Positions 38,917-55,644 of a DNA stretch of 64,000 bases are shown piece by piece. The position numbers and the translations under genes are program-made. The stretch is from positions 124,001 through 188,000 of IMG/VR virus record IMGVR_UViG_3300033141_006329; one strand, 5' to 3'. The notes under the pieces were generated by a model. It was not told the origin of the DNA. It saw nothing but the letters and a program-made list of their open reading frames with translations, and made no database searches. How positions within the stretch are numbered: position 1 is the stretch's first letter; each line of letters opens with the position of its first letter.

Positions 38917-40164
38917 ATGGGGTTTTGTCCTTTTTTATCATTGAGAAAAATAATACAAGTGAATGTTGCACCAAGGACAATTGGTGGTAGCATCACAAGA
39001 GATAATGGGAGTACGGTAACGTCGTGGATTCCAGGAACAGAAGAAGCTGTTTATAAACCCACATCTATTTCTGCTGCTATAGACACAGTAGATTACAATT
39101 CGGCTATAACATATGAACCTTGTCAAACTACAGCATGTCAATTATGGGATGATAAAAATAGTAGATGTGGCGCAAGAAGTTCAGATTTTATATACAATGG
39201 CAACACAGTTGAATCTGATGCAATAGTTAATATTATAAAAGCTGTAGTAGGTTCATACAGTCAAATAACTTCAGGTAATACATTGGTCCAAGAATTTCAA
39301 GATGTTGTAGGAAAAAGCACAGAGCAAGATAATTCAAGTAGTTTATATAAATATCTTCAGGATGTTATAGGAACACATGCTGAGAAAGATGGTATTAATA
39401 ATTCAACTAGTCTAATAAACTATCTACAGGATGTTGTAGGAAAAAATGCAGATAAGGATAATGATAAAAGTCTGTTATCATTCCTATCATCAATATTAGG
39501 GGCAAATACAGATAAGGATTCTGGTAATTCTTTTCTTAAACAGTTTACAGAAATAGTAGGATCAATAACAGACAAAGATGTAGCATCAGCTGATTGGGGA
39601 ATTTTAACCAGTCTCCTGAGTACATTCAGATTAACACATGTACCATCTGGAGAAGCACCCGCACCCTCAACACTGATAATGGAATTTTTAAATAAAACAG
39701 ATGCAGATAAGGTGGATTTTAGTTCATTGGGAGTTTCGGGTAGTATATATGGTCACGAGTTTATGATATATGAATCAAACCCGGATGATTTACCACCCAT
39801 ACTTAAAACGATACAGGAACATCCAGATTTTAAAACAGATGATATAGTAGATTTAGCAAATAGTAATTGTTCAGTGACTAATACTGTACCAGGGCATGAT
39901 AGTACTGATGAATGGGAATATACAATAGAAGCGACTGATGGTACAACAGATTTTGTAGTTGATGGTATAACTACGGATATGTATGTATTCGTTGAAAGCA
40001 TAAATAAAGTGGGAACCATAACTGAAGTTGCTCCGGATAGTGTTGCTACAAAATTAAAAATAAATATGGGCGTATATGATATTGATCCTTTACCAAACCT
40101 GTCATATTTCTTTATAGCAGGTAGGAAAAGAATATCATTTGCAGAATATGAATCCATGTTTTGA
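38917..40164 (+). CDS. Putative virion (baseplate/spike-associated) protein with internal repeats
   Basis: FCPF...C....CQLW motif; QDVVG...D...SL repeats; next to PAAR-like gene. Confidence 0.45.
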   Translation: MGFCPFLSLRKIIQVNVAPRTIGGSITRDNGSTVTSWIPGTEEAVYKPTSISAAIDTVDYNSAITYEPCQTTACQLWDDKNSRCGARSSDFIYNGNTVESDAIVNIIKAVVGSYSQITSGNTLVQEFQDVVGKSTEQDNSSSLYKYLQDVIGTHAEKDGINNSTSLINYLQDVVGKNADKDNDKSLLSFLSSILGANTDKDSGNSFLKQFTEIVGSITDKDVASADWGILTSLLSTFRLTHVPSGEAPAPSTLIMEFLNKTDADKVDFSSLGVSGSIYGHEFMIYESNPDDLPPILKTIQEHPDFKTDDIVDLANSNCSVTNTVPGHDSTDEWEYTIEATDGTTDFVVDGITTDMYVFVESINKVGTITEVAPDSVATKLKINMGVYDIDPLPNLSYFFIAGRKRISFAEYESMF

Positions 40165-40179
40165 TAAGGATAATATAAT

Positions 40180-40494
40180 ATGCCAGCAAATAGTAGATTG
40201 TTCGATCTATATGCAGGGGTAACACCATTACCTCCCCATCCACCAATCCCGCCTCCACCAATGGTCGGAGCAATAATAGCATTATGTTCAGGCGATCATA
40301 CAGTAGAATCTTTTAGTCAAGCCACTATCGGAAGTATGGGGTTGGACAACTGTATGATTCATGTGACATTCATAGTAGCAGGAAGCGGGACATCTAAAAC
40401 AAACGGGAAAGCAAAAGCTCGTGTTGGAGATCCTGTTGTCGGTGGTACTATAGGGGTAATGGTAACAGGCGCAGGGACAGAACAGACAGGATGA
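40180..40494 (+). CDS. PAAR-like spike tip protein
   Basis: MPANSRLFD...H; GS....NG...ARVGD.V. Confidence 0.7.
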   Translation: MPANSRLFDLYAGVTPLPPHPPIPPPPMVGAIIALCSGDHTVESFSQATIGSMGLDNCMIHVTFIVAGSGTSKTNGKAKARVGDPVVGGTIGVMVTGAGTEQTG

Positions 40495-40514
40495 TGATAA
40501 TCATCTCAGCCACA
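40494..40514. repeat. Left arm of long-range inverted repeat (partner 41392-41411)
   Basis: ATGATAATCATCTCAGCCACA pairs with TGTGGCTGAGGTATTATTAT. Confidence 0.6.
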
Positions 40515-40531
40515 CATATTAACAAACCAAT

Positions 40532-40569
40532 CTATCTTTAAAAATAATAAGCGTTTAGATAGTGCGCTT
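40532..40569. promoter_or_regulatory. Pseudoknot-like element upstream of RBS
   Basis: Interlocked pairings CTATCT/AGATAG and AAGCG(T)/(G)CGCTT. Confidence 0.45.
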
Positions 40570-40582
40570 TGAGAGGAAAGTT

Positions 40583-41383
40583 ATGAACATGTATCAAGAA
40601 AAATTTGTAGCAGTGGTTAAATGTAATGGAAAAATTATGAGAGAAAGGGATGGAGTTATATCCTTACCATTTGGATCAGAATATTCTATATTATTAAAAA
40701 ATCTTAATACAGTAAAAGCATCTGTAGATATATCTGTAGATAGTATGGATGTGGTTGATGGTCATTCTATTTTAATAGAACCTGAAAAATCTGTAGAGTT
40801 AGAAGGATTTATGAGAGGATCTGTTGCGAGGAATAGATTCAAATTTATAAATAAAACTAAGGAAATATCTGAATATAGGGGTGATAGAATAGATGATGGG
40901 TTAATACGAGTAGAGGTTACATTTGAGAAGAAAATAGAAAAAACAATTACAATATCAGATGGTACTTATTATACTTATTATCCTCCAGTTTATAATCATT
41001 TTACATGGACAGATGGTGGAAGTGGCAGTACTGGTGGTTTATTATCAGAAATGGATTTTTCGATCTCTAATACATGTAGTACCAAATTGGGATCAGGTCA
41101 TGTATCATGTAGTGCCGCCCAGAGTGACATGAGCGAGCCATTATCAGATGAGGGTATAACAGTTAAAGGATCTTCTTGTAATCAAGCATTCGCCCCGGCA
41201 TCAATAGGAATGTTGGAAGATAATTCCTCAGTTATAATATTACAGTTGAGTGGTTATAATGCTGAGGGTATTAAAGTAAAAAGTCCTATAACAGTTAACA
41301 CCAAGATAACATGTGAAACCTGCGGTAAGGGTTCCAAATCTAATTTAAAATTTTGTGGGAATTGTGGAACCTCACTAATATAG
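40583..41383 (+). CDS. Hypothetical protein, beta-rich N-domain and C-terminal zinc ribbon
   Basis: LPFGSEYSILLKN...DGLIRVE...EGITVKGS...C.TCG......FC.NCG; start from GAGAGG RBS. Confidence 0.75.
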   Translation: MNMYQEKFVAVVKCNGKIMRERDGVISLPFGSEYSILLKNLNTVKASVDISVDSMDVVDGHSILIEPEKSVELEGFMRGSVARNRFKFINKTKEISEYRGDRIDDGLIRVEVTFEKKIEKTITISDGTYYTYYPPVYNHFTWTDGGSGSTGGLLSEMDFSISNTCSTKLGSGHVSCSAAQSDMSEPLSDEGITVKGSSCNQAFAPASIGMLEDNSSVIILQLSGYNAEGIKVKSPITVNTKITCETCGKGSKSNLKFCGNCGTSLI

Positions 41384-41459
41384 TACAATCTTGTGGCTGA
41401 GGTATTATTATATTTTTTGAGGATATTATTTTTTATAGTTAATTATCGGAGGATTAAAA

Positions 41460-41738
41460 ATGAAAGAACAAACCGTTAAACAATCTGAGGAATTAAAACA
41501 AGCAATAGAATCAAGGGATAAATTTTTACAAAGACATCCTAACCTAAAAATATTTCAAATGGAAATCGACAATGCTTTAGATAGGGTAAAGGACCCCTTA
41601 GAGAGATTGAGAATTCTATTCAAGTTAATAACTAAAAGAAATAATGAGCTACAGGAGGCAATAAACGAATACAAAATTGAATATACTTCATTACCTGAGG
41701 ATGTCAAGAAAGAAGTAGAACCTGTAACAATGTTGTGA
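41460..41738 (+). CDS. Hypothetical helical protein; stop codon supplied by IS end
   Basis: GGAGG RBS; TGA lies inside the IS right end. Confidence 0.6.
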   Translation: MKEQTVKQSEELKQAIESRDKFLQRHPNLKIFQMEIDNALDRVKDPLERLRILFKLITKRNNELQEAINEYKIEYTSLPEDVKKEVEPVTML

Positions 41739-41880
41739 ACTACCACAACTTCAAGTTGCAGCTTCCTGCTTCGCTGAAATCCACTTGACAAGGTTCTATA
41801 CAAGCAACCAAGTTAGAGGTTGATCTCTCAGCAGGCGTTGAACTGATGCGTCCCGCACCAGTTTGATTTAACCCTTTATA
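41735..41880 (-). ncRNA. Predicted omegaRNA/reRNA scaffold overlapping tnpB 3' end
   Basis: Position at right end as known for TnpB; 5' boundary approximate; guide would start at 41734 (AACAUUGUUACAGGUUCUAC). Confidence 0.55.
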
Positions 41881-42990
41881 GAGGATGTTCTTTGCAGCAT
41901 GAATGTCACGATCTTTTCTATAACCACAGTCGCAGACGAACATCCTATCTTTTAAGGTTAGTGATTTGTTAATTGCGTTACACGCAGGACATAATTTAGT
42001 GGAGGGATAGTATCTATCTACGAGCCTTAGAGTATGTGACTTTTTCTTTAAGTCACTCATTATTCCTCCAAGGATTGAATGTTGAACTGATTTTCCAAAC
42101 CACTTCTCGCTCCACCCTTTAATATTCTCGTCTTGCACACAGACAATTTTATACTTCTTTGTGATATGCGAAACAATTTTGTTTTTCGCATCTTTCTTCT
42201 GATTAGTTAACTTGTTGTATTTCTTAGCTATCTTCGAATTGAGTTTCCTATTATTCTTAGAGCCTTTCTTCTTGTGTTTCTTCTTTCGTTGAAGACGTTT
42301 TAGACTTTCTGGTATTGGGAATGAGAAGCTATGCTTCTCACCATTATCAAAAGTAAGAGAAGTCTTGATGCCGAAGTCAATGCCTATAGCTTCCTGTTCA
42401 AACACTTTCTCTTCCTTCGGTAAATAGCAAGTGACATGTAAGAAATAATCTTCGCATTTTCGTACGAGGTTCGCTGTTGCAATCTCTGCATTTGAAGGGA
42501 TTTGTTTCAAACCTATCAGTTTGAAACTACCCTTAAATCCTTGCAGCTTGAGATACTTGCCTCGCAGCTTATGCGTACTATTGAATTGCTTCAGATAAAT
42601 GCTATTCGATCTACTCTTGAACTTCAATCTACCTACTTTCTTACCTTTCTTCTTCTTAGCAGATAGTCCACAAATGTTGTGAAACAACCTCTCTCGAACG
42701 CCCTGCTTCATCTGAGAAGAAATCGCTTCAAGCGAACGAGTTTCGGCGATTTTATCTTTTCCGCAAATTGAGATCTCGTTCACTTTAGTATTAAAATTTA
42801 CCGGGTTATCTGTACCTAACATACAATTATACAACCACTTAGCTTCTAAGAATAAACGATCCAGGTACTCTCGTTTTTTCTTGGAGAGATGTGATTTATC
42901 AAACTTCAGCTCGTAAACTTTACAAATCAAAGACTTACGTCTTTCTCTTGTAGCCTTACCAGCCAGTTTGATTCTTTCGTTTTTTGTCAT
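41740..42990 (-). CDS. tnpB: TnpB RNA-guided endonuclease
   Basis: AIGIDFGIK (RuvC-I), YYPSTKLC.AC, C.CG...DRDIHAAKNI (RuvC-III). Confidence 0.93.
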   Translation of the reverse strand: MTKNERIKLAGKATRERRKSLICKVYELKFDKSHLSKKKREYLDRLFLEAKWLYNCMLGTDNPVNFNTKVNEISICGKDKIAETRSLEAISSQMKQGVRERLFHNICGLSAKKKKGKKVGRLKFKSRSNSIYLKQFNSTHKLRGKYLKLQGFKGSFKLIGLKQIPSNAEIATANLVRKCEDYFLHVTCYLPKEEKVFEQEAIGIDFGIKTSLTFDNGEKHSFSFPIPESLKRLQRKKKHKKKGSKNNRKLNSKIAKKYNKLTNQKKDAKNKIVSHITKKYKIVCVQDENIKGWSEKWFGKSVQHSILGGIMSDLKKKSHTLRLVDRYYPSTKLCPACNAINKSLTLKDRMFVCDCGYRKDRDIHAAKNILYKGLNQTGAGRISSTPAERSTSNLVACIEPCQVDFSEAGSCNLKLW

Positions 42991-43008
42991 TTACAGATTT
43001 CCTCTTTA

Positions 43009-43023
43009 TTTGTAGTTTGTCCT
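43009..43023 (-). promoter_or_regulatory. Late promoter motif AGGACAAACTACAAA inside the IS, upstream of tnpB
   Basis: Reverse complement of TTTGTAGTTTGTCCT, followed by GAGG RBS and ATG. Confidence 0.65.
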
Positions 43024-43133
43024 CTGAGAAGGCTGGGAAAAAACAACAGAATTCATCCACAGCTTCAGGTTGTGGTATTCTTCTTGGATGGGAGGAATAA
43101 TATCCTTAGATAAAAATGTGTCTGATTTTATAA

Positions 43134-43148
43134 AGGACAAACTGTAAA
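43134..43148 (+). promoter_or_regulatory. Putative late promoter motif AGGACAAACTGTAAA
   Basis: Motif copy. Confidence 0.65.
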
Positions 43149-43235
43149 GAAGAATTTAAATTTTATTTCTTGTGAGGAAATAGAAATTAAGAGTTAGTTT
43201 TATAAGGAACTCAAAAAATTGAAAGGAGAATTAAA

Positions 43236-44273
43236 ATGAGTTTTGAATTATTAGATGATGTTTTGTTAGAGTCTGGGTATAAAACTCCAGATGAAGAGAA
43301 AAAAGAAGAGGAAGTTGTCAATACTGAAGATAATGATATATTCGAGGAATTAGATGGAATGATCGAAGGGGCTATGAGAGAATCCCTGAGAAATACTGTT
43401 TTTTGTAGTGAAAATGATAGTGATGTTAAATTAGAGCATCTCGAAGTAGTTGAGAGTGCTGAATTTACCGAAGAGCAAATGACTAAGTTTATGGATACTA
43501 CGATATATCCTATATTGGAGATGTCTGGTTCATTAGAAGATAATGATAATGAAACTGTATCGTTGCCAATATTTGAAATAGTTGGTCTCTTAGAGGATTT
43601 AGGTTCAGATGAAATAACTGAGGAAAATGCTGATATAGAATTAGAAGCAATATGCGAATTCTATGGTATAAATGATGAAGATAGGGAAACTATCATTGCA
43701 GAGGCTACAGAATTGTTAGAATCACATGGTATAGATAAGCTTGATCCTTCAATGCAGGATGTTAGTCTTTTAGTATGTGAGACTATAGTTATTTTAGGCG
43801 AAGTTGATACGAGTGAAAATTTGGAAGAAGCAAAGAAGAAGGGTGGACGACCTACAAAGAAACAGGTTCAAATGAGAATACTCAGAGGACGCATAAAAGA
43901 TGCACCTGGAAAGGCTTTGGCTTATAGTAAAGAAAAAGGAAAAGAAGTTGGAAGTTGGGTTGCTGCTAAAGGTAAGGCAGGTTTGGCTAAAGGAAAAGAA
44001 GCTTTGGGTACGAAAAAAGGTAAGATTATAGCTGGTGCTATTACAATGGCTGCTGTAGCTGCTGCTGCTGCTCTTGCATATAGACGTAAGGGAGATAAAT
44101 GTAAAGGTCTTGATGGCGATGCGAAATCTAAATGTAAAGCCGCCGCTGTTAATGATGCAATCAAAGCATTGAACCAACAGAAATCACAATGTAAAAAAGC
44201 AAAAAATCCCGCCAAGTGTGCTGCTGGTGTTGATAAACAAATAGCAAAATGGAAAGGCCGCATGGCTGCATAA
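43236..44273 (+). CDS. Putative internal head protein: acidic N-half, basic C-half with hydrophobic helix
   Basis: Charge switch at LEEAKKK; many L-x-E sites; late motif upstream and terminator downstream. Confidence 0.55.
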   Translation: MSFELLDDVLLESGYKTPDEEKKEEEVVNTEDNDIFEELDGMIEGAMRESLRNTVFCSENDSDVKLEHLEVVESAEFTEEQMTKFMDTTIYPILEMSGSLEDNDNETVSLPIFEIVGLLEDLGSDEITEENADIELEAICEFYGINDEDRETIIAEATELLESHGIDKLDPSMQDVSLLVCETIVILGEVDTSENLEEAKKKGGRPTKKQVQMRILRGRIKDAPGKALAYSKEKGKEVGSWVAAKGKAGLAKGKEALGTKKGKIIAGAITMAAVAAAAALAYRRKGDKCKGLDGDAKSKCKAAAVNDAIKALNQQKSQCKKAKNPAKCAAGVDKQIAKWKGRMAA

Positions 44274-44303
44274 GTAAGGATAAATATATTTTATAGGATA
44301 GAA

Positions 44304-44336
44304 GGGGTCGGGTTTTAAATCCTGACCCCGCTTTTT
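44304..44336 (+). terminator. Intrinsic terminator
   Basis: GGGGTCGGG/CCTGACCCC stem followed by T5. Confidence 0.7.
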
Positions 44337-44356
44337 CTTAAGAGGAGTTTTGAAAG

Positions 44357-44746
44357 ATGCATTATTTAAAAAGATGGTTCGAGGAGTTAGGTAGTGGTAA
44401 TTGCTCACAATCCGTATCCACATATGAGACTCCTGCCAAACCCATTTTGAGACCCGAAACTGAAGATGAAATTACAACCGAAGAAGATGATGAACAAGAA
44501 GATATAAATGAAGGCACCACAGATAGGATAGATAAAAAAATACATGGGAGAAAAGATTATTGGGACCGACGAATAGAATATATTAGCAAGTTAATGGATG
44601 ATATAAAGACAGAGAGTAGGAAATGCAGAGATATGGGAGACCCCAAGAAATCTAGAGATTGTGTAGAGAAATGGAGAAAGGAAATGATTAGGGCTAGAGA
44701 GAGTATGGATAAAGCACAGACTGCATTGAGAAAGACAGAAGACTAG
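44357..44746 (+). CDS. Hypothetical protein (acidic then basic)
   Basis: GAGGAG RBS; charge switch at DINEG. Confidence 0.55.
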   Translation: MHYLKRWFEELGSGNCSQSVSTYETPAKPILRPETEDEITTEEDDEQEDINEGTTDRIDKKIHGRKDYWDRRIEYISKLMDDIKTESRKCRDMGDPKKSRDCVEKWRKEMIRARESMDKAQTALRKTED

Positions 44747-45432
44747 TGTCAATACCAAAACATCTCAATACAGTAGTGGTAAAAAATAAATACTACCCTG
44801 GAGGTTTAACCGAAGGTCAAGTTTGGTCACATTATCTAAAAAATAAACCTGAGATATTAAAGGAGATAAATAGAAAACCCGTAACTCTATTTATATTTAC
44901 AGATATAAATGAATGGATCGTCAAAAGAAAATTATTTAATTCTCCGTTCACATTAGATAATAGTAATTTTTCCTCAGTTCTTACGGGTCGCACTGTTTCA
45001 ATATCCGCCGAACAAGGAAAGATGACAGAATTTTGGATAATAGATATAGACCCCGGTCCAAGTGCAAATGAGATGTTGTTGAAGGATTGTATAACAGATT
45101 TAATATCCTCAACTATTTTTAAGATCCCTACAGTAAAGGGTATGAGAATAATTTCTACTTCTAAAGGATATCATTTTTATGTTTTATTAAAAAAGAAAAT
45201 GAATATCGATGTATCTAGAAGGATATTATTTAAAATGCTGACCTCAGAATTCACCGGCAAATATCTAATCAATAAAAAAAGTCCTAAAGGTCCAGAAATT
45301 AATTTGGATTTATCTCCCACTTCTTTTAGAGGATCTCATGTAGTTCCTGGTGCCCTTACAAGAAATGGTTTAGTGGCAGTAGATTGTACAAGAAATTGGG
45401 AATCCTTTACCAGACAAAGGGCGATAATATAA
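44746..45432 (+). CDS. Archaeo-eukaryotic primase domain, LigD polymerase-like
   Basis: YYP.GLT...V..HY, IIDIDPG (DxD), TSKGYHFYV motifs; GTG start. Confidence 0.7.
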   Translation: MSIPKHLNTVVVKNKYYPGGLTEGQVWSHYLKNKPEILKEINRKPVTLFIFTDINEWIVKRKLFNSPFTLDNSNFSSVLTGRTVSISAEQGKMTEFWIIDIDPGPSANEMLLKDCITDLISSTIFKIPTVKGMRIISTSKGYHFYVLLKKKMNIDVSRRILFKMLTSEFTGKYLINKKSPKGPEINLDLSPTSFRGSHVVPGALTRNGLVAVDCTRNWESFTRQRAII

Positions 45433-46373
45433 TGAAACAATATATACCTGAGCTGGATTATCATTTCGATCAATATTGGTCAACCAGAGGTGAGATACGT
45501 ATTAATAATGTGTTTCTTCCCGAAGTCGAAACTGAAGAAAACAATATCCCGACTGGATCATTTATAGAATTATTATTTAGTCAGGCATTTGTATATGATG
45601 ATTACAAGTATCGATTTGAGGAAATTGCATATACTTTATTTACTAAACCCATACGAGAAAGATTACAAAATAGTTCCACCCTGATAAATTGTTATATATC
45701 CACAGACTCGACATCTGAAACTAATTTATTTTCCTTAGAAACAACCGACCTTATTCTATTGGATAAACTTAAGGATTATAGACAAGATGTTGAGGGTTTA
45801 AATTTAGATGATGTAATTTATGATGACCTCACCACAGCATTATCAAAACTAATTTATATATATTTGGATATAATGCTACACAATTCATACGAACGATTTA
45901 ATACAATTGATACCTTAAGTACTGAGGATAATCTATTGTGTAACTTGTTTGAAACATATGTAGTTAACGAAGCATACAAGGCTATGAAAAACTGGTCATT
46001 CTTAATAGATGCTAATTTATTGGAATTAAGATTGGTACATGACGCAGTTGTTTTGAATGAGGAGCAGATAGAAAACGAACAAGCTCCAATGTCAACCTCT
46101 ACATATGATTTGGATATTTGGGTTTGGTGGAATGGTAGAAAATTAACATATGAAGAGGAGTATGATTTGTATAGGATATGGGATGGTCAAGATGGCCGCT
46201 TCTATACGCGAGTTGGTTGGCACGATAAGGGATTGGATATAAAATTAGGACATACTATAACTATGGAATATTATGTTGTTGTTCAACCATTGGATGCAGA
46301 AAAAGATCCTTTTGTTGATGGTGAAGAATATTCAGAAATAATGACCTGGTTACTAGATGGAGGTCTTTTTTAG
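45432..46373 (+). CDS. Putative baseplate/virion protein
   Basis: Acidic; V.WNG.KL....Y domain; terminal DGG; start by TAATG coupling. Confidence 0.45.
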   Translation: MKQYIPELDYHFDQYWSTRGEIRINNVFLPEVETEENNIPTGSFIELLFSQAFVYDDYKYRFEEIAYTLFTKPIRERLQNSSTLINCYISTDSTSETNLFSLETTDLILLDKLKDYRQDVEGLNLDDVIYDDLTTALSKLIYIYLDIMLHNSYERFNTIDTLSTEDNLLCNLFETYVVNEAYKAMKNWSFLIDANLLELRLVHDAVVLNEEQIENEQAPMSTSTYDLDIWVWWNGRKLTYEEEYDLYRIWDGQDGRFYTRVGWHDKGLDIKLGHTITMEYYVVVQPLDAEKDPFVDGEEYSEIMTWLLDGGLF

Positions 46374-48785
46374 ATGGCTAATGAACATGAGAGAATAGAT
46401 CAATTTTTCGAACTATTGGAATGGTTAAAACAGACTGACAGTATACCAGAAGAAGATATAGAAACATGGTTACACAGAAGTCCTGAACTCGAATATAAAC
46501 AAAAGCAACTGGCATATGATGATAAACAAAAAACAGTAGAATTTTTTGAAACAATTATAGATCAACCCGCATTCTCCTCCAACGATCATAAAAGATTAAG
46601 AAAATTCCTCATAGATTGGTATGCGAGTCATAGGTCATATGTAACCCAAATGTTTAAAAGTACTGATCCATTCAGTATGAGTTCAGAAGCCTTAAATGAA
46701 ATAATCCTAAGTTTTGGTTTTCCTTACCCTCAGAAAATAATATCAACCTCAAGAAAAGCTCAGTTTATATTAGATCTTATAAACATGTATCAAAAGAAAG
46801 GCACACCATCAGTTCTAGTAAAAGCACTACAAACGTATTTTGGTTTAAGCAATGTTATTTTATCTGAGTGGTGGATAAATAGAAGACCTAACGGTGAATT
46901 TTATGCTGTATCTGAACCAATATTTCCTGTAGGTTTGCAAGGGAATCCTTTATATAGAACAGAAATAAGTTATAGTGCATTTGCAGATGTCGATCCACTC
47001 TGGCATTTGAGTGAAGCAGAGTTGATATCAACTTATGCCAGTGCTAAAATTAAATTACCATCTATAACCTCACATATATCATTACAAGCAACAGTTAGTA
47101 TATTTGGAGTAAATGCAGCTCTGGCAATATTAAATAGAAAATTACAGGAATCATATGAATATTGGTCAGGGACAGGAGACCTTAATAGAGATATATCGTT
47201 ATCAAAATATGCGTGGACAATATCTCCTTTAGAATTAACCTTACTGATTGATTATGTTTTTAACAGCACAACTGATACTGCGGATAAGAGATTTATATTT
47301 TATAATGGTAGACATACACCCTTAGACATACCCGAATTAGATGAATCACGGGACGATATCGATGATGTGGAATTTAGTCTCATCATAGATGAATATAATC
47401 AAATAGTAAGGAAACCCGGAACCAGAGCAGAACGAGATGAATTATTAGCATTAAAAAAAGAAAGTTTTTCAGGAGTTATATCAGAACAATCTGTAACTGA
47501 TACCCTTAGAGATTCGGGTACCGTGTTAAATAGTATAAATCCAGAACTCAAAAGTGAATTTGATATATTGCTTGCAGCTGTAGGTAGTAATAGAAGAGAT
47601 ATATTAGATTCTCTATTGAGAGATTTGGAATATTATTTAATGGATACTTTAGGTGTCATGGAATATCCTATAAGTTATCTCATAACAGGATCTCCTATAC
47701 AAGATACATTAAAGGATGTTATGGATTTCTTTAAACCTTATAGAGCAAGAATAAGAGAATTTATAAGTTCTATGGCATTTGATGATCCTTTGGAAGATTC
47801 ACAGAGGGTTGATGATAGTCACTTTTATAATATGTATCTTCAAATGGTTGATAAAGGATATCTATCAGATTTAACGTTTGAACAATGTATGGTGGAAGAT
47901 CGTTTATACTTAGCATTGAATATGCCTTTCCATGAATATCTACTCAGTATGGGTGGGATTAAAGATTACCTATTTACAACAATTACTCACATGGCATCAT
48001 CTGTATCAGAAGTAGAAGATAGTAAACTCATAACACTAGATCAATGGTTTGTGGAACAGAATTATAACAAATTTGATTGGGGTATAGTTGAAGATAATTT
48101 GAGACATACCTTGATAACACAGAGATTGGGGTCTATATTACATATTCCTTACGACGCCACAACTGAAAATTATGGAGAGCAATTAGAAGATAATTTAGAG
48201 GCAATAATATATCACACAGAGAGATCTCACCTAGAAGATTTGCGTGATTCAAAAATAATTTCAATAGGTAATTCATTTCTAGAAACTAAACAGTTTGGAT
48301 TCAATTGTGGTTTCAATAAGGACAAACTCTTGATAGAACAAAATCAATTGATATACGATAGAGTTATTTATCCTGATGGATCTATAGGAACAATTAAGTG
48401 TGGAACAGATAGTTTAGGTTTATCTATTATTAGATTCTCCAACATAACTGATAATATTACACTTTCTGAAAATAGAATATATACTATTAATCAGCAATTC
48501 GTTGAAGAAGATAATAGAGGCTGGTGGGAAGATGGATTCTATTATGATAACATGATACCCGCAGTTAACAACATAGTTCATGATGATGCTTTTAGAAACG
48601 GACTCGATGAAGGTGGTTTGGATTATTTTATAGAGCATATGGCGCAAAGGTTATCAGATACTTATAATCCAACTGAACAACCAATAATAGGAACACATAT
48701 ACGTTTAATAGAGCCCTCAAATAATGACTTCTTAGATATGTCTCATGTTGAGGATTCTATTGAAATAGAGATTATAGATTTATAA
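46374..48785 (+). CDS. Putative baseplate wedge protein
   Basis: L......GF, YQKKGT...L and FFKPYRAR motifs seen in wedge/tail-I-like proteins. Confidence 0.55.
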   Translation: MANEHERIDQFFELLEWLKQTDSIPEEDIETWLHRSPELEYKQKQLAYDDKQKTVEFFETIIDQPAFSSNDHKRLRKFLIDWYASHRSYVTQMFKSTDPFSMSSEALNEIILSFGFPYPQKIISTSRKAQFILDLINMYQKKGTPSVLVKALQTYFGLSNVILSEWWINRRPNGEFYAVSEPIFPVGLQGNPLYRTEISYSAFADVDPLWHLSEAELISTYASAKIKLPSITSHISLQATVSIFGVNAALAILNRKLQESYEYWSGTGDLNRDISLSKYAWTISPLELTLLIDYVFNSTTDTADKRFIFYNGRHTPLDIPELDESRDDIDDVEFSLIIDEYNQIVRKPGTRAERDELLALKKESFSGVISEQSVTDTLRDSGTVLNSINPELKSEFDILLAAVGSNRRDILDSLLRDLEYYLMDTLGVMEYPISYLITGSPIQDTLKDVMDFFKPYRARIREFISSMAFDDPLEDSQRVDDSHFYNMYLQMVDKGYLSDLTFEQCMVEDRLYLALNMPFHEYLLSMGGIKDYLFTTITHMASSVSEVEDSKLITLDQWFVEQNYNKFDWGIVEDNLRHTLITQRLGSILHIPYDATTENYGEQLEDNLEAIIYHTERSHLEDLRDSKIISIGNSFLETKQFGFNCGFNKDKLLIEQNQLIYDRVIYPDGSIGTIKCGTDSLGLSIIRFSNITDNITLSENRIYTINQQFVEEDNRGWWEDGFYYDNMIPAVNNIVHDDAFRNGLDEGGLDYFIEHMAQRLSDTYNPTEQPIIGTHIRLIEPSNNDFLDMSHVEDSIEIEIIDL

Positions 48786-48976
48786 GGAGAGGGGCTAATG
48801 GGTAAAGTTAAAAGGATTCCAATAATAATTGGAGACAATCAAAGGAAAAATATCAGAGATGAGTTTATTTCTGGGGATATTAAACCAAAAATAAATGTCA
48901 TTAAAAAAGATATAGAAAAAAATGATGGAACAAAGGATAGTTTATACATTGTCAAGGAAAAGAGGAGGATTGAATA

Positions 48977-49708
48977 ATGGGTAGTAAATATGAGACCCCT
49001 ATAGTCGTGCCTAAAGATTATATTGTAAATCCCAAAGAACGTGGAATGTTTGGAAGGACTAATCTTGTTAATATTAAGGTTCGAAATATTGTAACAGGGG
49101 AAATAGAAAGTGATCAAAATAGTAACCTTATAGTATACAGAGGAAGAGACTGGCTATTACAAAGGGCTTATAATGCTGGATTTGGAAGCGGCACTAGAGA
49201 TGGTGAACAATGGGAAGCTATGTGGATAAATTGGTTAGCAGTAGGTACGGGTGGGTCAGTAGGTGGAAATCCATTGACTCCTACAAGTCCTGCATTACCA
49301 GATTATGTATTAAATACGCATGGAACTGTTGATGTGGGAAGTAATTATATTACAGTTGGCGGAAAGGAATATCATACATTTGATTCTGGATTCCCAAAAT
49401 TCTTACACGATACGGATGTAACGGAGACTGTATATGGTCCTTCTTTTACTGATTATAACGGTACAACTAATCCTAGTGACAGCGTATTGATAGGGCTGGT
49501 TAAAGTGACGCTCTCATCTGAAGAATGTAATGGTGGGGCACTGGATACAGATTATCAGGATATTTCTGAGGCAGGTTTATTTATAAGCAGCTCGGCTAGT
49601 GTTGGATCTCCTCCTACTCAGTTGGAATTATTTGCAAGAGTGTGCTTTTCAACAGTAAGAAAGAACAACGAAAGGGAAATTATCCTAAGTTGGTTCACGT
49701 ATTTCTAA
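48977..49708 (+). CDS. Baseplate / tail-fibre attachment protein
   Basis: NLIV..GR..L, AVGTGG, ISEAGLF, LFARV.F....K motifs. Confidence 0.65.
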   Translation: MGSKYETPIVVPKDYIVNPKERGMFGRTNLVNIKVRNIVTGEIESDQNSNLIVYRGRDWLLQRAYNAGFGSGTRDGEQWEAMWINWLAVGTGGSVGGNPLTPTSPALPDYVLNTHGTVDVGSNYITVGGKEYHTFDSGFPKFLHDTDVTETVYGPSFTDYNGTTNPSDSVLIGLVKVTLSSEECNGGALDTDYQDISEAGLFISSSASVGSPPTQLELFARVCFSTVRKNNEREIILSWFTYF

Positions 49709-49759
49709 TGATTTCAATGAGTTGGAATATATCAACTCATTTCATGGTAAAAATCAAAC

Positions 49760-49804
49760 AGGACAAACTCTAAACTTAAACAATTTAAGAGAGGGGTTTG
49801 TCCT
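49760..49804 (+). promoter_or_regulatory. Late promoter motif forming an RBS-sequestering hairpin
   Basis: AGGACAAACTCT pairs with GGGGTTTGTCCT directly before ATG; inner stem CTTAAA/TTTAAG. Confidence 0.65.
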
Positions 49805-50998
49805 ATGGTTAGTTGTAAATTATGCGGTAAAAAATTTGAAACTTTAAGAGGTGTTGCTACGCATCTAAGATTTTGTAAAAAGAATCTGAATGAAATGAAA
49901 ATTGTAGATTATTATAATCAATTTATAAAACAAGGTATTGAAGGAAAGTGTGTACTGTGTGGAAAATATACTAGATTTAACGGATTAGATATAGGTTTTT
50001 CTACGTATTGTGGGAGTCGATGTGCAGCACTTGGTGTAAATAAAGGATTAAAGGCAAATCCCAGAATAAATGAACCAAAAAAGAAATCGGTTATCTGCAA
50101 AATGTGTAATAAAAAATTAAACAATATAAATAGCTTGGGGAACCATCTTAAATATTGTAAATCTAATATTGATAGATTAAATTCAAACCAATATTATAAT
50201 AAATATATAAAGAAAGATGATGAAGAATTATGTAAAACATGTGGAAATGTTACTAAATTCAAAGGTCTGGAGAAAGGTTATGATGCATATTGTAGTAAGA
50301 TTTGTTCAAACAGAGATAGACCGATTTCAGAAAAATTAAATAATACTATTATGTATACAGATAGATTACAAAAAATTGGACTTGAACCTATATATGAAGG
50401 TGAATATTTTACCGGACGCCAAGAGATAGAATTCAAGTGTTCAAAATGTAGTCGTATATTTAAAAATTATACATTTAATATATTAAAAATTAGAAACAAA
50501 TGTCCATTTTGTACAGATAAAAGTAGATCAATATCTGAAAGATTAATATATTCATATCTAAAACATAAATTTCATAAATATAATGTTTATAACAATTATA
50601 AAAAATTATTATATCCATTTGAAATAGATATAATAATGCCTTCTCTTAATATATCTTTAGAATATAATGGTCTTTATTATCATTCAAGTCAAAATTCTCA
50701 AAATAGAGATTTGTGGAAATCACATGGATGCATCAAAAATAATTTCAAGCATGTGGTTATATGGGAAGACGAGTTTAATATACATAATAAAGATTATAAA
50801 TTTATAGATACCATAATAAAAAATGCTATGGAATGTGATGTTAAAAAATACATGAAAAATACAAAATATTTTACAACATTTCCTATCAGTATAGCCGATA
50901 TAGACAACTTCGATAAAACTAAAAGATTTAAACTTTTACAGTTGAGTGAATGTAATAAAAACTTTAAAAGACCTCCAAGATCATTATTCGTCCCATAA
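49805..50998 (+). CDS. Free-standing homing endonuclease: duplicated zinc-finger module plus Vsr-like nuclease
   Basis: Two C..C...HL..C...C..CG....F.GL..G...YC modules; EIDI......LEYNGLYYH...IWED. Confidence 0.75.
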   Translation: MVSCKLCGKKFETLRGVATHLRFCKKNLNEMKIVDYYNQFIKQGIEGKCVLCGKYTRFNGLDIGFSTYCGSRCAALGVNKGLKANPRINEPKKKSVICKMCNKKLNNINSLGNHLKYCKSNIDRLNSNQYYNKYIKKDDEELCKTCGNVTKFKGLEKGYDAYCSKICSNRDRPISEKLNNTIMYTDRLQKIGLEPIYEGEYFTGRQEIEFKCSKCSRIFKNYTFNILKIRNKCPFCTDKSRSISERLIYSYLKHKFHKYNVYNNYKKLLYPFEIDIIMPSLNISLEYNGLYYHSSQNSQNRDLWKSHGCIKNNFKHVVIWEDEFNIHNKDYKFIDTIIKNAMECDVKKYMKNTKYFTTFPISIADIDNFDKTKRFKLLQLSECNKNFKRPPRSLFVP

Positions 50999-51024
50999 TT
51001 TCTAAAAATAATCAAAAAGATATT

Positions 51025-51052
51025 AGGGAGGGGCTTTCGCCCCTTCCTTTTT
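51025..51052. terminator. Intrinsic terminator
   Basis: AGGGAGGGGC-TTTC-GCCCCTTCCT followed by T tract, between convergent genes. Confidence 0.75.
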
Positions 51053-51791
51053 ATCCAACCATTTCTCCGGATCCTAACCGTATATCCCAAGAATACTTCC
51101 CACTTATATCCGATAGTTCATCGCTTATTTGATCTTTACTTTTAACCACAACTCCGCTAAAACATCCTAACGCAGTGTCTTGAAAACAACCTCTAATATG
51201 TTCGAATTGTGTCATATAGATCTCCTCTTGTATTGACTTGTTAATAGATAAATCGTTAAATATATCAATCAATGATGGTTTCTTAAAATCTATCCATACA
51301 TAATTTATGATACTTTCTGCTTCACCTTTAGTCGCACAATACTCATCCTCAAGAAGTTTCTCCTGAAGATCTTTCCTAGTAACTAGACATAAATCTCTAT
51401 CATTTGAACCACAGATATTAGATATAAGTTCTCTGGGATTTATACTTATATTAAATTTCTTCACCAACTCATGTAAAATAATACACATAGTCTCTGCTTT
51501 ATCGTATTCTATTCTACGCAATAACCCAATTGCTCTCTGCCCTGGTTTTATTATCAATGCCTCTATACCTTCCGCCGATATAAATTTAATGGAAGGAATA
51601 ATATTAATATTCAAATTATTACCTAAAACTTTTAAAGGATATTTAGTATACAAATCAAAATTTTCCGGAACATTAAAACTGACGGTTATAGGTGAATTAT
51701 TATATTTTATTGAACACACCTTCAGCCAATCAGCAACAGCAGAATAATTAGGAGAAGTTAAGCATACATTAAAGTCCTCTAAACATGTCAT
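51051..51791 (-). CDS. Hypothetical protein
   Basis: 246-aa ORF overlapping end of LRR gene. Confidence 0.55.
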   Translation of the reverse strand: MTCLEDFNVCLTSPNYSAVADWLKVCSIKYNNSPITVSFNVPENFDLYTKYPLKVLGNNLNINIIPSIKFISAEGIEALIIKPGQRAIGLLRRIEYDKAETMCIILHELVKKFNISINPRELISNICGSNDRDLCLVTRKDLQEKLLEDEYCATKGEAESIINYVWIDFKKPSLIDIFNDLSINKSIQEEIYMTQFEHIRGCFQDTALGCFSGVVVKSKDQISDELSDISGKYSWDIRLGSGEMVG

Positions 51792-52584
51792 CTTTGTCCT
51801 CCTCTTCTACTAGTTCTGTCCCTAATAAATTTTCATCTACTCCTAAATTAAAATATTCAGGACAAGATGTAATAAACTCTTTTTGTATAACTTCTTTGGT
51901 TTTGAATAAACCTTCAGTCATTAACATTTCCTCTACTATTGTGATAGCATCATTTATAGATATATTCTTAATATGAGATACTCTGGGTAGAAGACTGAAT
52001 ACAATGCGATCAGAACTATGCCTAGTGTGAGTTTTTATTTCAACTCCACCAAAAACTGCCATTATGAAAATATCACCACCTACTAAATTTACTACAAATT
52101 CATCATCCAACCAAGTGTATCTTTTAGATATAAAGGGTTTACCATTGAAGGTTTTTAAATTTGGTAGAGCTTTTAAAATATAGGATTGATGAAAAGGTAT
52201 ATCTGCATAGAGATGAACTAAATTTTTCAAATTACATAATGGAAGATAATTGTTGATACTATTGTTAGATATGTTTAGATATTGTAGAGTAGTCATATCT
52301 TTTAAGGGTGCTATATCACCTATACAGTTACTATACAAATCAATATGTTCTAAAGGAAGATTTTCTAAGGGTGTTAAATCACAAGCATACCCATTCTGCA
52401 TCCTAAGAGATATTAAATTTCTACATTTATGTAATCCTGTAAGATTAGTAATATTATCCTTTATTATTAATGATTTAACTTTTAAAAAATCCTCTTTAGT
52501 CAGTTTATGCATACAACTTAAACCAAGCATATGTTGTATACAACGCTTCATTACAGGATTAAGTGTTTTATATTTGTGTGTCAT
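51769..52584 (-). CDS. Leucine-rich repeat protein
   Basis: ITNLTGL..C.NL..L, DLTPL..L.L..IDL..N.I.DI.PL repeats; start from GGAGG RBS. Confidence 0.8.
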   Translation of the reverse strand: MTHKYKTLNPVMKRCIQHMLGLSCMHKLTKEDFLKVKSLIIKDNITNLTGLHKCRNLISLRMQNGYACDLTPLENLPLEHIDLYSNCIGDIAPLKDMTTLQYLNISNNSINNYLPLCNLKNLVHLYADIPFHQSYILKALPNLKTFNGKPFISKRYTWLDDEFVVNLVGGDIFIMAVFGGVEIKTHTRHSSDRIVFSLLPRVSHIKNISINDAITIVEEMLMTEGLFKTKEVIQKEFITSCPEYFNLGVDENLLGTELVEEEDKDDMFRGL

Positions 52585-52676
52585 TTTTATTTCCTCCATT
52601 TTTAAATTTTTTAAAACCACCTTTATATATCTGTTTTTTAATGAGTTCCTCCTATTCAATCCAAACCCTTTTATAA

Positions 52677-52691
52677 AGGACAAATTAAAAA
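52677..52691 (+). promoter_or_regulatory. Putative late promoter motif AGGACAAATTAAAAA
   Basis: Motif copy upstream of sheath gene. Confidence 0.65.
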
Positions 52692-52753
52692 GACTAGGAT
52701 AAACGTTTAGGATGATAATCCTATTTAAAACACTCATAAAAAAGGAGATTATA

Positions 52754-54534: not shown

Positions 54535-55644
54535 TTATTCCATTAAAATCTTTTTAAATTCTTTATCATTTATATCTAAAATACTACCTTTTTTATTAAC
54601 TTTAATTCTAATAAATCTACAACCCAACTCTTTAATTATTTCTTTCTGTCTTCTAACATCTTCAAGTTTGAGACACCCTCCCAGATAATGGTGAGACTCG
54701 TCTATTTCTATAGCAATATTTCTTTTCTTATCATACCCATCTAGAAAATACCCAATGACTCTATATTCACCACCCCTCTCAGCATGCTGAAAATCAAATC
54801 CTTTATCATTTAGAATTTCTATTATATGGCAACCCTTAGAATTATAATAGGGAGTCACTTGACCATTACAATTTTCAATTTTAGATAATGTCATTTCCCT
54901 TCTCTGTAGTCGAAATTCTTTTGTTTTTGAATAACTGTCTACACCATATTTTTTTAAACAAGTTTGTTTTCTATTAATTATTGCTTCGGGACTAAGTAAT
55001 ATTGCAGCCGCATCTCTATCTAAAGAAGCACAACTAATATTACAATAACTATCAACTGCAAAACCCTTAATAAGACTAATAAATTTGGTAGCATTATTAC
55101 AACTGTCTCTTTTACATTTTGAAGGTTTACCTCCTAAATATTTGATATGATATTCTTCCAGCTCTTTGTCACCAAATCGATGTATACCATTATGAATAGA
55201 AAGATGTTTAGATAAATCATATTTATTTTCAAATCTTTTCTCAATACTATTCTCTAAACAAATCATACAAACTTCTGGTAGTTCATAATATCCTTCCTCT
55301 ATTTTCTTATGTTCTGCTTTATCCTTCCAGTTTTTAGATCTAATTTTCTTGGAGTCAGGGTTTAGATTTCTACAATGTTTACAATATTGATTACCGCTAT
55401 TGCTTTTATTTGCCCGGTAACCATTATTTGTCTCATAAAAACTCATCTCCCCACCACAAACACAACAATATTTTTCTTTCTTTAATTCATTAGGGTTATC
55501 TATAATATAAACATCAAAATATTTATTTTTTATATTTTTCAAACCCTGAATATTATGTGCATTTCTTAAATGTTGTGCCAAACCATTTGCATTTGCAACC
55601 AGTTTTCCACATATTGCACATTTAGTTTTAAATTCTTCTCTCAT
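54535..55644 (-). CDS. Free-standing homing endonuclease (C2H2 fingers plus Vsr/EDxHD-like nuclease)
   Basis: QHAE.GGEY...GYFLDGYD...IAIEIDE.HH. Confidence 0.75.
   Translation of the reverse strand: MREEFKTKCAICGKLVANANGLAQHLRNAHNIQGLKNIKNKYFDVYIIDNPNELKKEKYCCVCGGEMSFYETNNGYRANKSNSGNQYCKHCRNLNPDSKKIRSKNWKDKAEHKKIEEGYYELPEVCMICLENSIEKRFENKYDLSKHLSIHNGIHRFGDKELEEYHIKYLGGKPSKCKRDSCNNATKFISLIKGFAVDSYCNISCASLDRDAAAILLSPEAIINRKQTCLKKYGVDSYSKTKEFRLQRREMTLSKIENCNGQVTPYYNSKGCHIIEILNDKGFDFQHAERGGEYRVIGYFLDGYDKKRNIAIEIDESHHYLGGCLKLEDVRRQKEIIKELGCRFIRIKVNKKGSILDINDKEFKKILME

What the first reader, a model, noticed from the sequence alone, without database searches (positions are those of the whole stretch)
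41735..43087. tnpB-only element with reconstructable empty site, TAM and guide
Seen: right end ...GTAGTTCAC at 41735 and a related left-end hairpin. Joining 41734 to 43088 gives ATG TTA TGG GAG GAA TAA, extending ORF 41460 in frame to PVTMLWEE-stop; the insertion supplies TGA and removes only 3 residues. Known: TnpB cuts TAM plus right-flank sequence at element-free alleles. Inference: TAM is (C)CCAT and guide AACAUUGUUACAGGUUCUAC, so the target is the empty allele in a related phage.
Basis: partly seen in the sequence, partly recalled or inferred. Interest (0 to 1): 0.6.

Follow-up and report, generated by a model that had tools for sequence, protein, structure and literature searches.

The report
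TnpB-only transposon in a jumbo phage

Summary
Window 41735-43096 (minus strand) is a non-autonomous IS200/IS605 (IS1341-type) element. It has a 416-aa TnpB, matching subterminal hairpins at both ends and a conserved structured omega-RNA over the last ~40 codons of tnpB.

- **Right end:** the boundary at 41735 (...GTAGTTCAC|) recurs in about 45 related elements.
- **Empty allele:** a Logan contig (L074) from a ~93%-identical phage reads ...ACAATGTT|ATAATA.... The insertion therefore runs to 43096, not 43087.
- **TAM:** it is (A)TTAT, not CCCAT. Close relatives show TTAT|TCC at their left ends. The wider family shows TTTAT or TTTAC. This matches the tested ISGst2 pattern (TAM TTTAT, end motif TTCAC).
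- **ORF 41460:** it is 92 aa in both alleles (TTA TAA becomes TTG TGA), so no residues are lost.
- **Guide:** The empty allele carries ATTAT plus an 18/20 match.

L074 carries a second, related element about 0.8 kb away, and the window is the empty site for that one. The canonical RuvC-II glutamate is Gln across the clade, with an invariant Glu two residues later, so nuclease activity is inferred, not shown.

This is a new member of a known kind. It is a useful natural filled/empty pair for testing TnpB homing between phages.

The parts
41735..43096 (-). Whole non-autonomous IS200/IS605 (IS1341-type, tnpB-only) element, 1,362 bp
   Evidence: This is the insertion relative to the empty allele L074: blastn breakpoints at 41734/43097 and a gap-free junction alignment. 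Ends are conserved in relatives.
41740..42990 (-). tnpB, 416 aa plus stop. D205, Q286/E288 and D362 occupy the RuvC motifs; C334, C337, C353 and C355 form the zinc ribbon.
   Evidence: Pfam OrfB_IS605 plus Cas12f1-like_TNB. PDB matches to ISDra2 and ISFba1 TnpB. Motif conservation across 120 homologues. AlphaFold2 mean pLDDT 80.6.
41735..41863 (-). Conserved structured core of the omega-RNA scaffold (5' end not mapped). It overlaps the last ~40 codons of tnpB and ends at the RE boundary.
   Evidence: RNAalifold on 14 relatives gave 22 pairs, 15 of them with compensatory changes. 92.9% of cells are paired against 34-49% when partners are slid. Residues 377-416 of TnpB, encoded here, have pLDDT below 50. 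Single-sequence fold z = -2.6.
41743..41761 (-). RE subterminal hairpin (CTGCAACTTGAAGTTGTGG), also the last stem of the omega-RNA
   Evidence: The stem covaries across about 45 loci while the flanking CAGGAAGC and GTAGTTCAC stay fixed.
41735..41739 (-). Transposon-encoded end motif (TEM) TTCAC, the last 5 nt of the element
   Evidence: Conserved terminus in relatives. It is the same TEM as ISGst2 (PMC10055086).
41715..41734 (-). Predicted 20-nt guide template (AACATTGTTACAGGTTCTAC on the tnpB strand), inside the 3' end of ORF 41460
   Evidence: It lies directly 3' of the RE boundary. L074 has ATTAT followed by an 18/20 match, with mismatches at positions 11-12. Its use as a guide is inferred from how TnpB works.
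43097..43101 (-). TAM: ATTAT on the tnpB strand (core TTAT, 43097-43100). On the plus strand it reads A+TAA, the last base of the Leu codon plus the original stop codon of ORF 41460.
   Evidence: Empty allele junction. TTAT|TCC at the left ends of L075 and L076. NTTAY in 21 of 23 family left ends.
43040..43096 (-). Left end. In order: TCCTCCCATC, the CAAGAAGA box, the hairpin CCACAACCTGAAGCTGTGG (43057-43075), then ATGAATTC.
   Evidence: Aligns with the left ends of L075 and L076 and with the family architecture. Hairpin reported.
41460..41738 (+). Host ORF of 92 aa. Its last sense-codon base and its stop codon are supplied by the element (TTG TGA).
   Evidence: The L074 homologue P0002 is also 92 aa, 95% identical, and ends TTA TAA.
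40917..40940 (+). Empty site for the second, related element carried by L074: TTAC followed by ATTTGAGAAGAAAATAGAAA, inside the 273-aa ORF
   Evidence: L074:1-65 is a right end (86% identical to this one) that abuts ATTTGAGAAAAAATAGAG. The window reads GGTTAC|ATTTGAGAAG at 40915-40930.

Best explanation
Window 41735-43096 is a non-autonomous IS200/IS605-family element of the tnpB-only (IS1341-like) kind, of the same end type as ISGst2. It is inserted 3' of a TTAT motif that overlaps the stop codon of a 92-aa phage gene.

It encodes TnpB and, over the 3' end of tnpB, an omega-RNA. The scaffold of that RNA ends at the right end, and its guide is read from the 20 nt of phage DNA beyond it.

The TnpB-omega-RNA complex should recognise (A)TTAT followed by AACATTGTTACAGGTTCTAC. 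That combination exists only where the element is absent: in a precisely excised copy, or in the genome of a co-infecting relative such as L074. The complex would cut there. Repair from an element-bearing genome then restores or spreads the element. The occupied allele is protected because TTCAC, not TTAT, precedes the target.

Shown here: the boundaries, the TAM position, the absence of a target duplication, the end architecture, the RNA covariation, and the filled/empty polymorphism. Inferred: expression, cleavage activity, guide length and homing.
For: - **Empty allele.** L074 gives exact breakpoints at 41734|43097 and no duplication.
- **Right end.** CAGGAAGC, a covarying hairpin and GTAGTTCAC| are conserved in about 45 loci, and the flanks diverge immediately afterwards.
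- **Left end.** The order is TAM, 10-14 nt, CAAGAA box, hairpin, ATGAATT in 21 of 23 family left ends. TAM position 5 covaries with the box: T goes with AAGA/AATA in 13 of 13 cases, and C goes with AAAG/AAAT in 7 of 7.
- **Omega-RNA.** 15 of 22 pairs show compensatory changes; 92.9% of cells are paired against 34-49% in slid controls. The protein tail encoded there is predicted to be disordered.
- **TnpB identity.** Sequence and fold both match TnpB. D205, E288, D362 and the four zinc-ribbon cysteines are invariant or nearly so in 120 homologues.
- **Related elements.** They sit at different sites in related phages (L074, L077, L080), and Spirochaete MAGs carry several copies each, so the lineage is mobile.
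- **Published mechanism.** ISGst2 has TAM TTTAT and TEM TTCAC, and its donor joints are cut by TnpB (PMC10055086).
Against: - The canonical RuvC-II glutamate (ISDra2 E278) aligns with Gln286. Activity depends on E288 substituting for it, which I could not test.
- No tnpA was found in the 64-kb window. The other ~240 kb of the contig and the host were not examined, so the source of transposase is unknown.
- Only one empty allele was found, and its target differs from the guide at positions 11-12.
- There are no RNA or cleavage data, and no Rfam family matched.
- The empty allele could reflect precise excision, or a site that was never occupied. The sequence cannot tell these apart.
Confidence: 0.8

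Rival explanations
1. One reading: the element spans 41735-43087, the TAM is (C)CCAT, and the uninterrupted ORF ends ...PVTMLWEE.
For: Joining 41734 to 43088 stays in frame and reaches a TAA.
Against: - The empty allele L074 lacks the 9 bases 43088-43096 and ends ...ML-stop.
- Those 9 bases align with the left ends of L075 and L076, which are each preceded by TTAT.
- No family member shows CCCAT at the left-end boundary.
- An exact-match search of viral contigs for the predicted junction found nothing.
Confidence: 0.02
2. A nuclease-dead or domesticated TnpB: with Gln at the canonical RuvC-II glutamate position, the protein only binds DNA under RNA guidance, for example as a repressor (as in TldR), or is a decaying relic.
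For: - Q286 aligns with ISDra2 E278 in both single-sequence and profile alignments.
- At least one close relative (L077) has lost its left end and looks immobilised.
Against: - Q-[D/N]-E is invariant across 120 homologues, with E288 in 119 of 120, alongside intact D205, D362 and the zinc ribbon. That pattern points to conservation of an altered active site, not to decay.
- Conserved RuvC-II rearrangements of this general sort are catalogued and interpreted as active (PMC10691335).
- This copy keeps both transposon ends.
- The clade is multi-copy in genomes.
- The protein is full length, not C-terminally truncated.
Confidence: 0.12
3. A plain passenger IS: the element hopped in from the host through a host TnpA acting in trans. 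TnpB serves only the ordinary retention after excision, with no role in phage-phage interaction.
For: - There is no tnpA in the window.
- Both ends are intact.
- The family is abundant in bacterial MAGs.
- A relative with tnpA exists (L023).
Against: - This does not really conflict with the best explanation; it differs only in where the empty target arises.
- The nearest relatives (72-79% aa) are all on phage-like contigs, while bacterial copies are about 40% identical.
- Two ~93%-identical phages carry different related elements 0.8 kb apart. Both points suggest a phage-resident lineage.
Confidence: 0.35

Closest known systems
ISGst2 and GstTnpB2 of Geobacillus stearothermophilus (Meers et al. 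2023; PMC10055086)
   Same: - IS605-family element with subterminal hairpins.
- TAM TTTAT and end motif TTCAC, differing at positions 3 and 5. Here they are ATTAT and TTCAC, with TTTAT or TTTAC in the wider family.
- The omega-RNA overlaps the 3' end of tnpB.
- Most copies lack tnpA.
- Hairpin-only mini-elements accompany the family (see L077:799-858).
   Different: - This one lives in a jumbo phage.
- This clade has Q-x-E in place of the canonical RuvC-II Glu.
- Nothing here has been tested experimentally.
ISDra2 TnpB (PDB 8EXA, 8H1J, 8BF8)
   Same: - Same domain order and fold: E 8e-27 with a clade profile, TM 0.69-0.75 normalised to the target.
- D of RuvC-I, D of RuvC-III and the CxxC...CxC zinc ribbon are all present.
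   Different: - About 17-19% identity.
- ISDra2 E278 aligns with Gln286.
- Per my recollection of the literature, the ISDra2 TAM is TTGAT; here it is TTAT.
- RuvC-III reads DRDIH rather than DRDxN.
IS608 of Helicobacter pylori (the mechanistic model for IS200/IS605)
   Same: - Insertion 3' of a TTAC-like tetranucleotide with no duplication, and seamless excision.
- A DNA 'guide' tetranucleotide 5' of each hairpin. Family left ends with TTTAC carry AAAG, and those with TTTAT carry AAGA, as the IS608 rule would predict. That rule is from my memory of Barabas et al. 2008 and is not re-derived here.
   Different: IS608 carries tnpA. This element does not.
Free-standing homing endonuclease genes of T4-like phages (SegF, SegB, mob) and 'non-restorative transposon homing' as proposed in PMC13565253
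   Same: A selfish nuclease gene in a phage whose target exists only in relatives that lack it. The expected result is gene conversion or marker exclusion during co-infection.
   Different: Here target recognition would be RNA-guided, with self and non-self told apart by whether the element is present. No experiment has yet shown this in phages.

Membership tests
IS200/IS605 family, tnpB-only (IS1341-type) element | Encodes a TnpB (OrfB_IS605 domain plus zinc-ribbon/TNB domain, RuvC fold) | tested here: met
   Pfam E 4e-13 and 4e-12, both above the curated cut-offs. PDB profile hit to ISDra2 TnpB at E 8e-27. Foldseek top hits are TnpB structures.
IS200/IS605 family, tnpB-only (IS1341-type) element | Related imperfect subterminal hairpins at the left and right ends, in the same orientation, with no terminal inverted repeats | tested here: met
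   The LE hairpin (43057-43075) and the RE hairpin (41743-41761) align with each other and with relatives. The stems covary across the family.
IS200/IS605 family, tnpB-only (IS1341-type) element | Insertion 3' of a short AT-rich motif (TAM) with no target-site duplication | tested here: met
   The empty allele reads ...ATGTT|ATAATA.... Removing 41735-43096 restores colinearity with no gap or duplication. The TAM is ATTAT on the element strand.
IS200/IS605 family, tnpB-only (IS1341-type) element | Y1 (HUH) transposase TnpA in the element (defines autonomous members) | tested here: not met
   The element holds only tnpB. tblastn with the TnpA of relative L023 found nothing below E = 1 in the window. 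The element is therefore non-autonomous. The rest of the 306-kb contig and the host were not searched.
Active RNA-guided TnpB nuclease | RuvC D-E-D catalytic triad | tested here: inconclusive
   D205 and D362 are invariant. The position aligned to ISDra2 E278 is Gln286, invariant in 120 of 120 homologues. E288 is present in 119 of 120 and lies just past the end of the same strand, E280-286.
Active RNA-guided TnpB nuclease | Structured omega-RNA that overlaps the tnpB 3' end and stops at the RE boundary, followed by the guide | tested here: met
   Covariation in 15 of 22 pairs; slid controls are far lower. The boundary is conserved. Transcription itself was not tested.
Active RNA-guided TnpB nuclease | TAM-dependent, guide-dependent DNA cleavage | not testable with these tools
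   This needs a plasmid-interference or in vitro assay.
ISGst2-type ends (Meers et al. 2023) | TAM TTTAT paired with end motif TTCAC | tested here: met
   TEM TTCAC lies at 41735-41739. The TAM is ATTAT here, TTTAT or GTTAT in close relatives, and TTTAT or TTTAC family-wide. The published values are in PMC10055086.
Nuclease-dead TnpB derivatives (TldR-like repressors) | Loss of catalytic motifs or C-terminal truncation, and loss of the transposon ends | tested here: not met
   The protein is full length with RuvC-I and RuvC-III and the zinc ribbon intact, and both ends are present. Only the RuvC-II position is unusual.
Homing-type selfish nuclease in phages | Presence/absence polymorphism at the nuclease's own target site among related genomes | tested here: met
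   The window is filled and L074 is empty, at ~93% overall identity. L074 carries ATTAT plus an 18/20 guide match.
Homing-type selfish nuclease in phages | Cleavage of the empty allele and copying of the element by recombination during co-infection | not testable with these tools
   No culture or host is known. Identity in 100-nt windows around the junction shows no obvious conversion tract.

The most novel reading that the evidence does not exclude
In this group of jumbo phages, TnpB elements act as RNA-guided homing or exclusion nucleases between co-infecting phages, independently of TnpA. Two ~93%-identical phages each carry a different related element about 0.8 kb apart, and each is the empty target allele for the other's element. 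During mixed infection each would therefore cut the other and convert or exclude the neighbouring markers. This would be a natural case of the 'non-restorative transposon homing' that has so far only been proposed for phages.
Probability: 0.3. Interest if true: 0.65.

Novelty: new member of a known kind. Interest (0 to 1): 0.42.

Why it matters
- **Testable reagents.** The corrected boundaries give a concrete set: a 416-aa phage TnpB, an omega-RNA scaffold of at least ~130 nt, TAM NTTAT, a 20-nt guide, and a natural target allele.
- **A natural test case.** The filled/empty pair, plus the reciprocal second element in the relative, is a ready-made case for asking whether TnpB elements spread between phages by RNA-guided homing. 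That has been proposed but not shown.
- **Active-site variant.** The clade-wide Q-x-E in RuvC-II adds a compact, apparently mobile lineage in which to test how the TnpB active site tolerates a moved glutamate.
- **A caution on method.** An in-frame reconstruction of an interrupted ORF is not sufficient evidence for a transposon boundary.

Tried and rejected
- Megablast of 39000-46000 against GenBank phages found no match. tblastn of TnpB there found only distant relatives; the best was Thermus phage phiLo at 39%.
- Relatives found through the neighbouring 273-aa gene (L002-L016, 36-48% aa) are not syntenic downstream, so they give no empty site.
- Exact-protein look-ups of TnpB and the 345-aa neighbour returned only the source contig.
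- Both metagenome-contig scans (left-flank DNA pattern; 345-aa protein) found nothing. One search failed because the machine was busy.
- The homologue search with the 345-aa protein added no further usable allele.
- Rfam found no family at E <= 1 in 41000-44000.
- Promoter and terminator scans were at chance level.
- Default DNA folding does not pick out the LE hairpin on the tnpB strand, because it has A-C mismatches. The hairpin is supported by comparison with relatives instead.
- A second GGTAGTTCAT at 55277 has no hairpin in front of it and is at chance expectation.
I did not repeat it.
- I did not attempt complex prediction; no protein-protein claim is made.

Full report
**What the window is.** The 64-kb window belongs to a 306-kb metagenomic contig (JGI 3300033141, Ga0366833_1000001; also IMG/VR UViG_3300033141_006329). 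It encodes a portal protein, a major head protein, a tail sheath and an NAD-dependent ligase. It is therefore a jumbo myovirus-like phage. It has no close relative among GenBank phages.

**The gene.** ORF 41740-42990 on the minus strand encodes 416 aa.
- It matches Pfam OrfB_IS605 and Cas12f1-like_TNB above their curated cut-offs.
- It matches solved TnpB structures by sequence.
- An AlphaFold2 model (mean pLDDT 80.6) matches them by fold. The top hits are ISFba1 and ISDra2 TnpB.
- tblastn with the TnpA of relative L023 found no tnpA in the window. The element is the non-autonomous, tnpB-only kind.

**Right end.** On the tnpB strand the element ends ...CAGGAAGC, then a hairpin, then GTAGTTCAC. 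This is 5 nt past the tnpB stop codon, at window 41735.
- The same architecture appears in about 45 related loci from phage contigs and bacterial and archaeal MAGs.
- The hairpin stems differ but stay complementary, and the flanks diverge immediately after TTCAC.

**Empty allele.** A homologue search with the 92-aa ORF next to the right end found one relative, P0002. It is 95% identical and also 92 aa long.
- Its contig L074 (Logan SRR3715733, 9.3 kb) aligns to window 41309-41734 at 93.4% and resumes at 43097-51792 at 92.8%.
- L074 reads ...GAACCCATAACAATGTT|ATAATACCCTTAG....
- When 41735-43096 is removed from the window, the two sequences align with no gap at the junction.
- The insertion is therefore 1,362 bp, ending at 43096 rather than 43087, and there is no target duplication.

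**Consequences of the corrected boundary.**
- *TAM.* On the tnpB strand the left flank is ...GGATATTAT|TCCTCCCATCCAAGAAG.... The TAM is ATTAT (core TTAT), not CCCAT.
- *The 92-aa ORF.* It ends ATG TTA TAA in the empty allele and ATG TTG TGA in the filled one. The protein is unchanged. The TAM overlaps the original stop codon, and the complement of the end motif happens to supply G+TGA.

**Independent support for TTAT.**
- The closest TnpB relatives with a left end, L075 (79% aa) and L076 (77% aa), lie in unrelated flanks. They read ...GGTTAT|TCCATCC... and ...ATTTAT|TCCTCAT....
- Pairs of copies within single Spirochaete MAGs fix the boundaries of more distant members at TTTAT| or TTTAC|.
- Across the family, 21 of 23 informative left ends have NTTAY 10-14 nt upstream of a CAAGAA box that precedes the hairpin.
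- TAM position 5 covaries with that box. T goes with AAGA or AATA in 13 of 13 cases, and C goes with AAAG or AAAT in 7 of 7. These counts share ancestry and are not independent events. The pattern is what the DNA-guide rule known from IS608 would predict (recalled from the literature).
- The experimentally characterised ISGst2 has TAM TTTAT and end motif TTCAC, differing at positions 3 and 5 (PMC10055086). That is the pattern seen here.

**Omega-RNA.** The last ~130 nt of the element (41735-41863) fold into a conserved structure.
- In 14 relatives RNAalifold predicts 22 pairs, 15 of them with compensatory changes.
- 92.9% of cells are paired, against 34-49% when partners are slid by 1-3 columns.
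- The TnpB residues encoded here (377-416) are not conserved and have pLDDT below 50. This stretch appears to be constrained as RNA rather than as protein.
- The 5' end of the RNA is not mapped, and no Rfam family matches.
- L074 carries ATTAT followed by an 18/20 match, with mismatches at positions 11-12.

**Catalytic site.** D205 (RuvC-I), D362 (RuvC-III) and the four zinc-ribbon cysteines are invariant in 120 homologues.
- The residue aligned to ISDra2 E278 is an invariant Gln286.
- E288 follows two residues later and is present in 119 of 120 homologues.
- In the model, Q286 ends strand 280-286 and E288 lies just beyond it.
- Conserved RuvC-II rearrangements have been catalogued and interpreted as active (PMC10691335). 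I could not assign this clade to a named branch, and I could not measure the active-site geometry. Nuclease activity is likely but inferred.

**Mechanism.** The TnpB-omega-RNA complex should cut DNA carrying TTAT next to the guide match. That combination exists only in element-free copies: a scarless excision product, or the genome of a co-infecting relative. Recombination with an element-bearing genome then restores or spreads the element. The occupied allele escapes because TTCAC replaces the TAM. This is the published TnpB logic (PMC10055086). Its extension to co-infecting phages has been proposed in a review (PMC13565253) but not demonstrated.

**Context that raises interest.**
- L074 begins with the right end of a second, related element (86% identical, with compensatory changes in its hairpin) in the opposite orientation. 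It is inserted in the homologue of the 273-aa gene.
- The window is the empty allele for that element, reading GGTTAC|ATTTGAGAAG at 40915-40930.
- Downstream of that insertion, the L074 gene has a frameshift and a ~300-nt deletion (my reading).
- The nearest TnpB relatives (72-79% aa) all lie on phage-like contigs, whereas bacterial copies are about 40% identical. One of those contigs, L077, encodes a sheath protein ~80% identical to the window's.
- This suggests a lineage that circulates among related jumbo phages.

**Verdict.** The feature is real and is an ordinary kind of element in an uncommon host.

Noticed in passing
L074:1-65, with window 40917-40940 as the matching empty site: The related phage carries a second TnpB-element right end (86% identical, opposite orientation) inside the homologue of the 273-aa gene. 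The window has TTAC|ATTTGAG... at that spot, so each phage is the empty allele for the other's element. The L074 guide flank differs from the window by one mismatch and a 1-nt indel within 20 nt.
   Followed up: partly
L074:66-246 compared with window 40921-41383: Downstream of that second insertion, the 273-aa gene homologue in L074 looks decayed: an in-frame stop, a frame change and a ~300-nt deletion, with only the C-terminal zinc ribbon still colinear. The gene therefore appears dispensable.
   Followed up: partly
window 41843-41851 (tnpB codons 286-288) and 120 homologues: The whole clade has Q-[D/N]-E where ISDra2 has its catalytic E278, and DRDIH instead of DRDxN in RuvC-III. This is a conserved RuvC-II variant whose activity is untested.
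   Followed up: partly
L077:3700-5262: The 74%-identical tnpB in a related phage (sheath ~80% aa identical) keeps the right end (TTCAT) but has no recognisable left-end hairpin or TAM upstream. It is probably an immobilised copy sitting next to the sheath gene.
   Followed up: partly
L077:799-858 (minus strand): A ~60-nt gene-less mini-element lies in an intergenic gap: TTTAT, a short spacer, AGGAAGAA, a hairpin, then GTAGTTCAC. It resembles the PATE-like elements described alongside ISGst.
   Followed up: no
window 41400-52700, compared with L003-L013: In more distant relatives the 273-aa gene is followed almost directly by a 228-aa gene and the tail sheath. Here about 11 kb of extra genes lie between them, including the TnpB element and an HNH/homing-endonuclease-like gene (49805-50998). 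This looks like an accessory hot spot.
   Followed up: no
window 49805-50998: A 397-aa ORF matches PHROG homing-endonuclease and HNH families (E 4e-18 and 2e-16). It is also present in L074. It is a second selfish nuclease about 7 kb from the TnpB element.
   Followed up: no
Family left ends (loci L017-L076): TAM position 5 covaries with the tetranucleotide in the CAAGAA box (T with AAGA, C with AAAG). The right ends carry CAGGAAGC with TTCAC. This is consistent with IS608-style DNA guides.
   Followed up: partly
L023:2543-2968: One phage-contig relative (45% aa TnpB) has a 141-aa Y1 TnpA immediately upstream, so autonomous members of this family do exist on viral contigs.
   Followed up: partly
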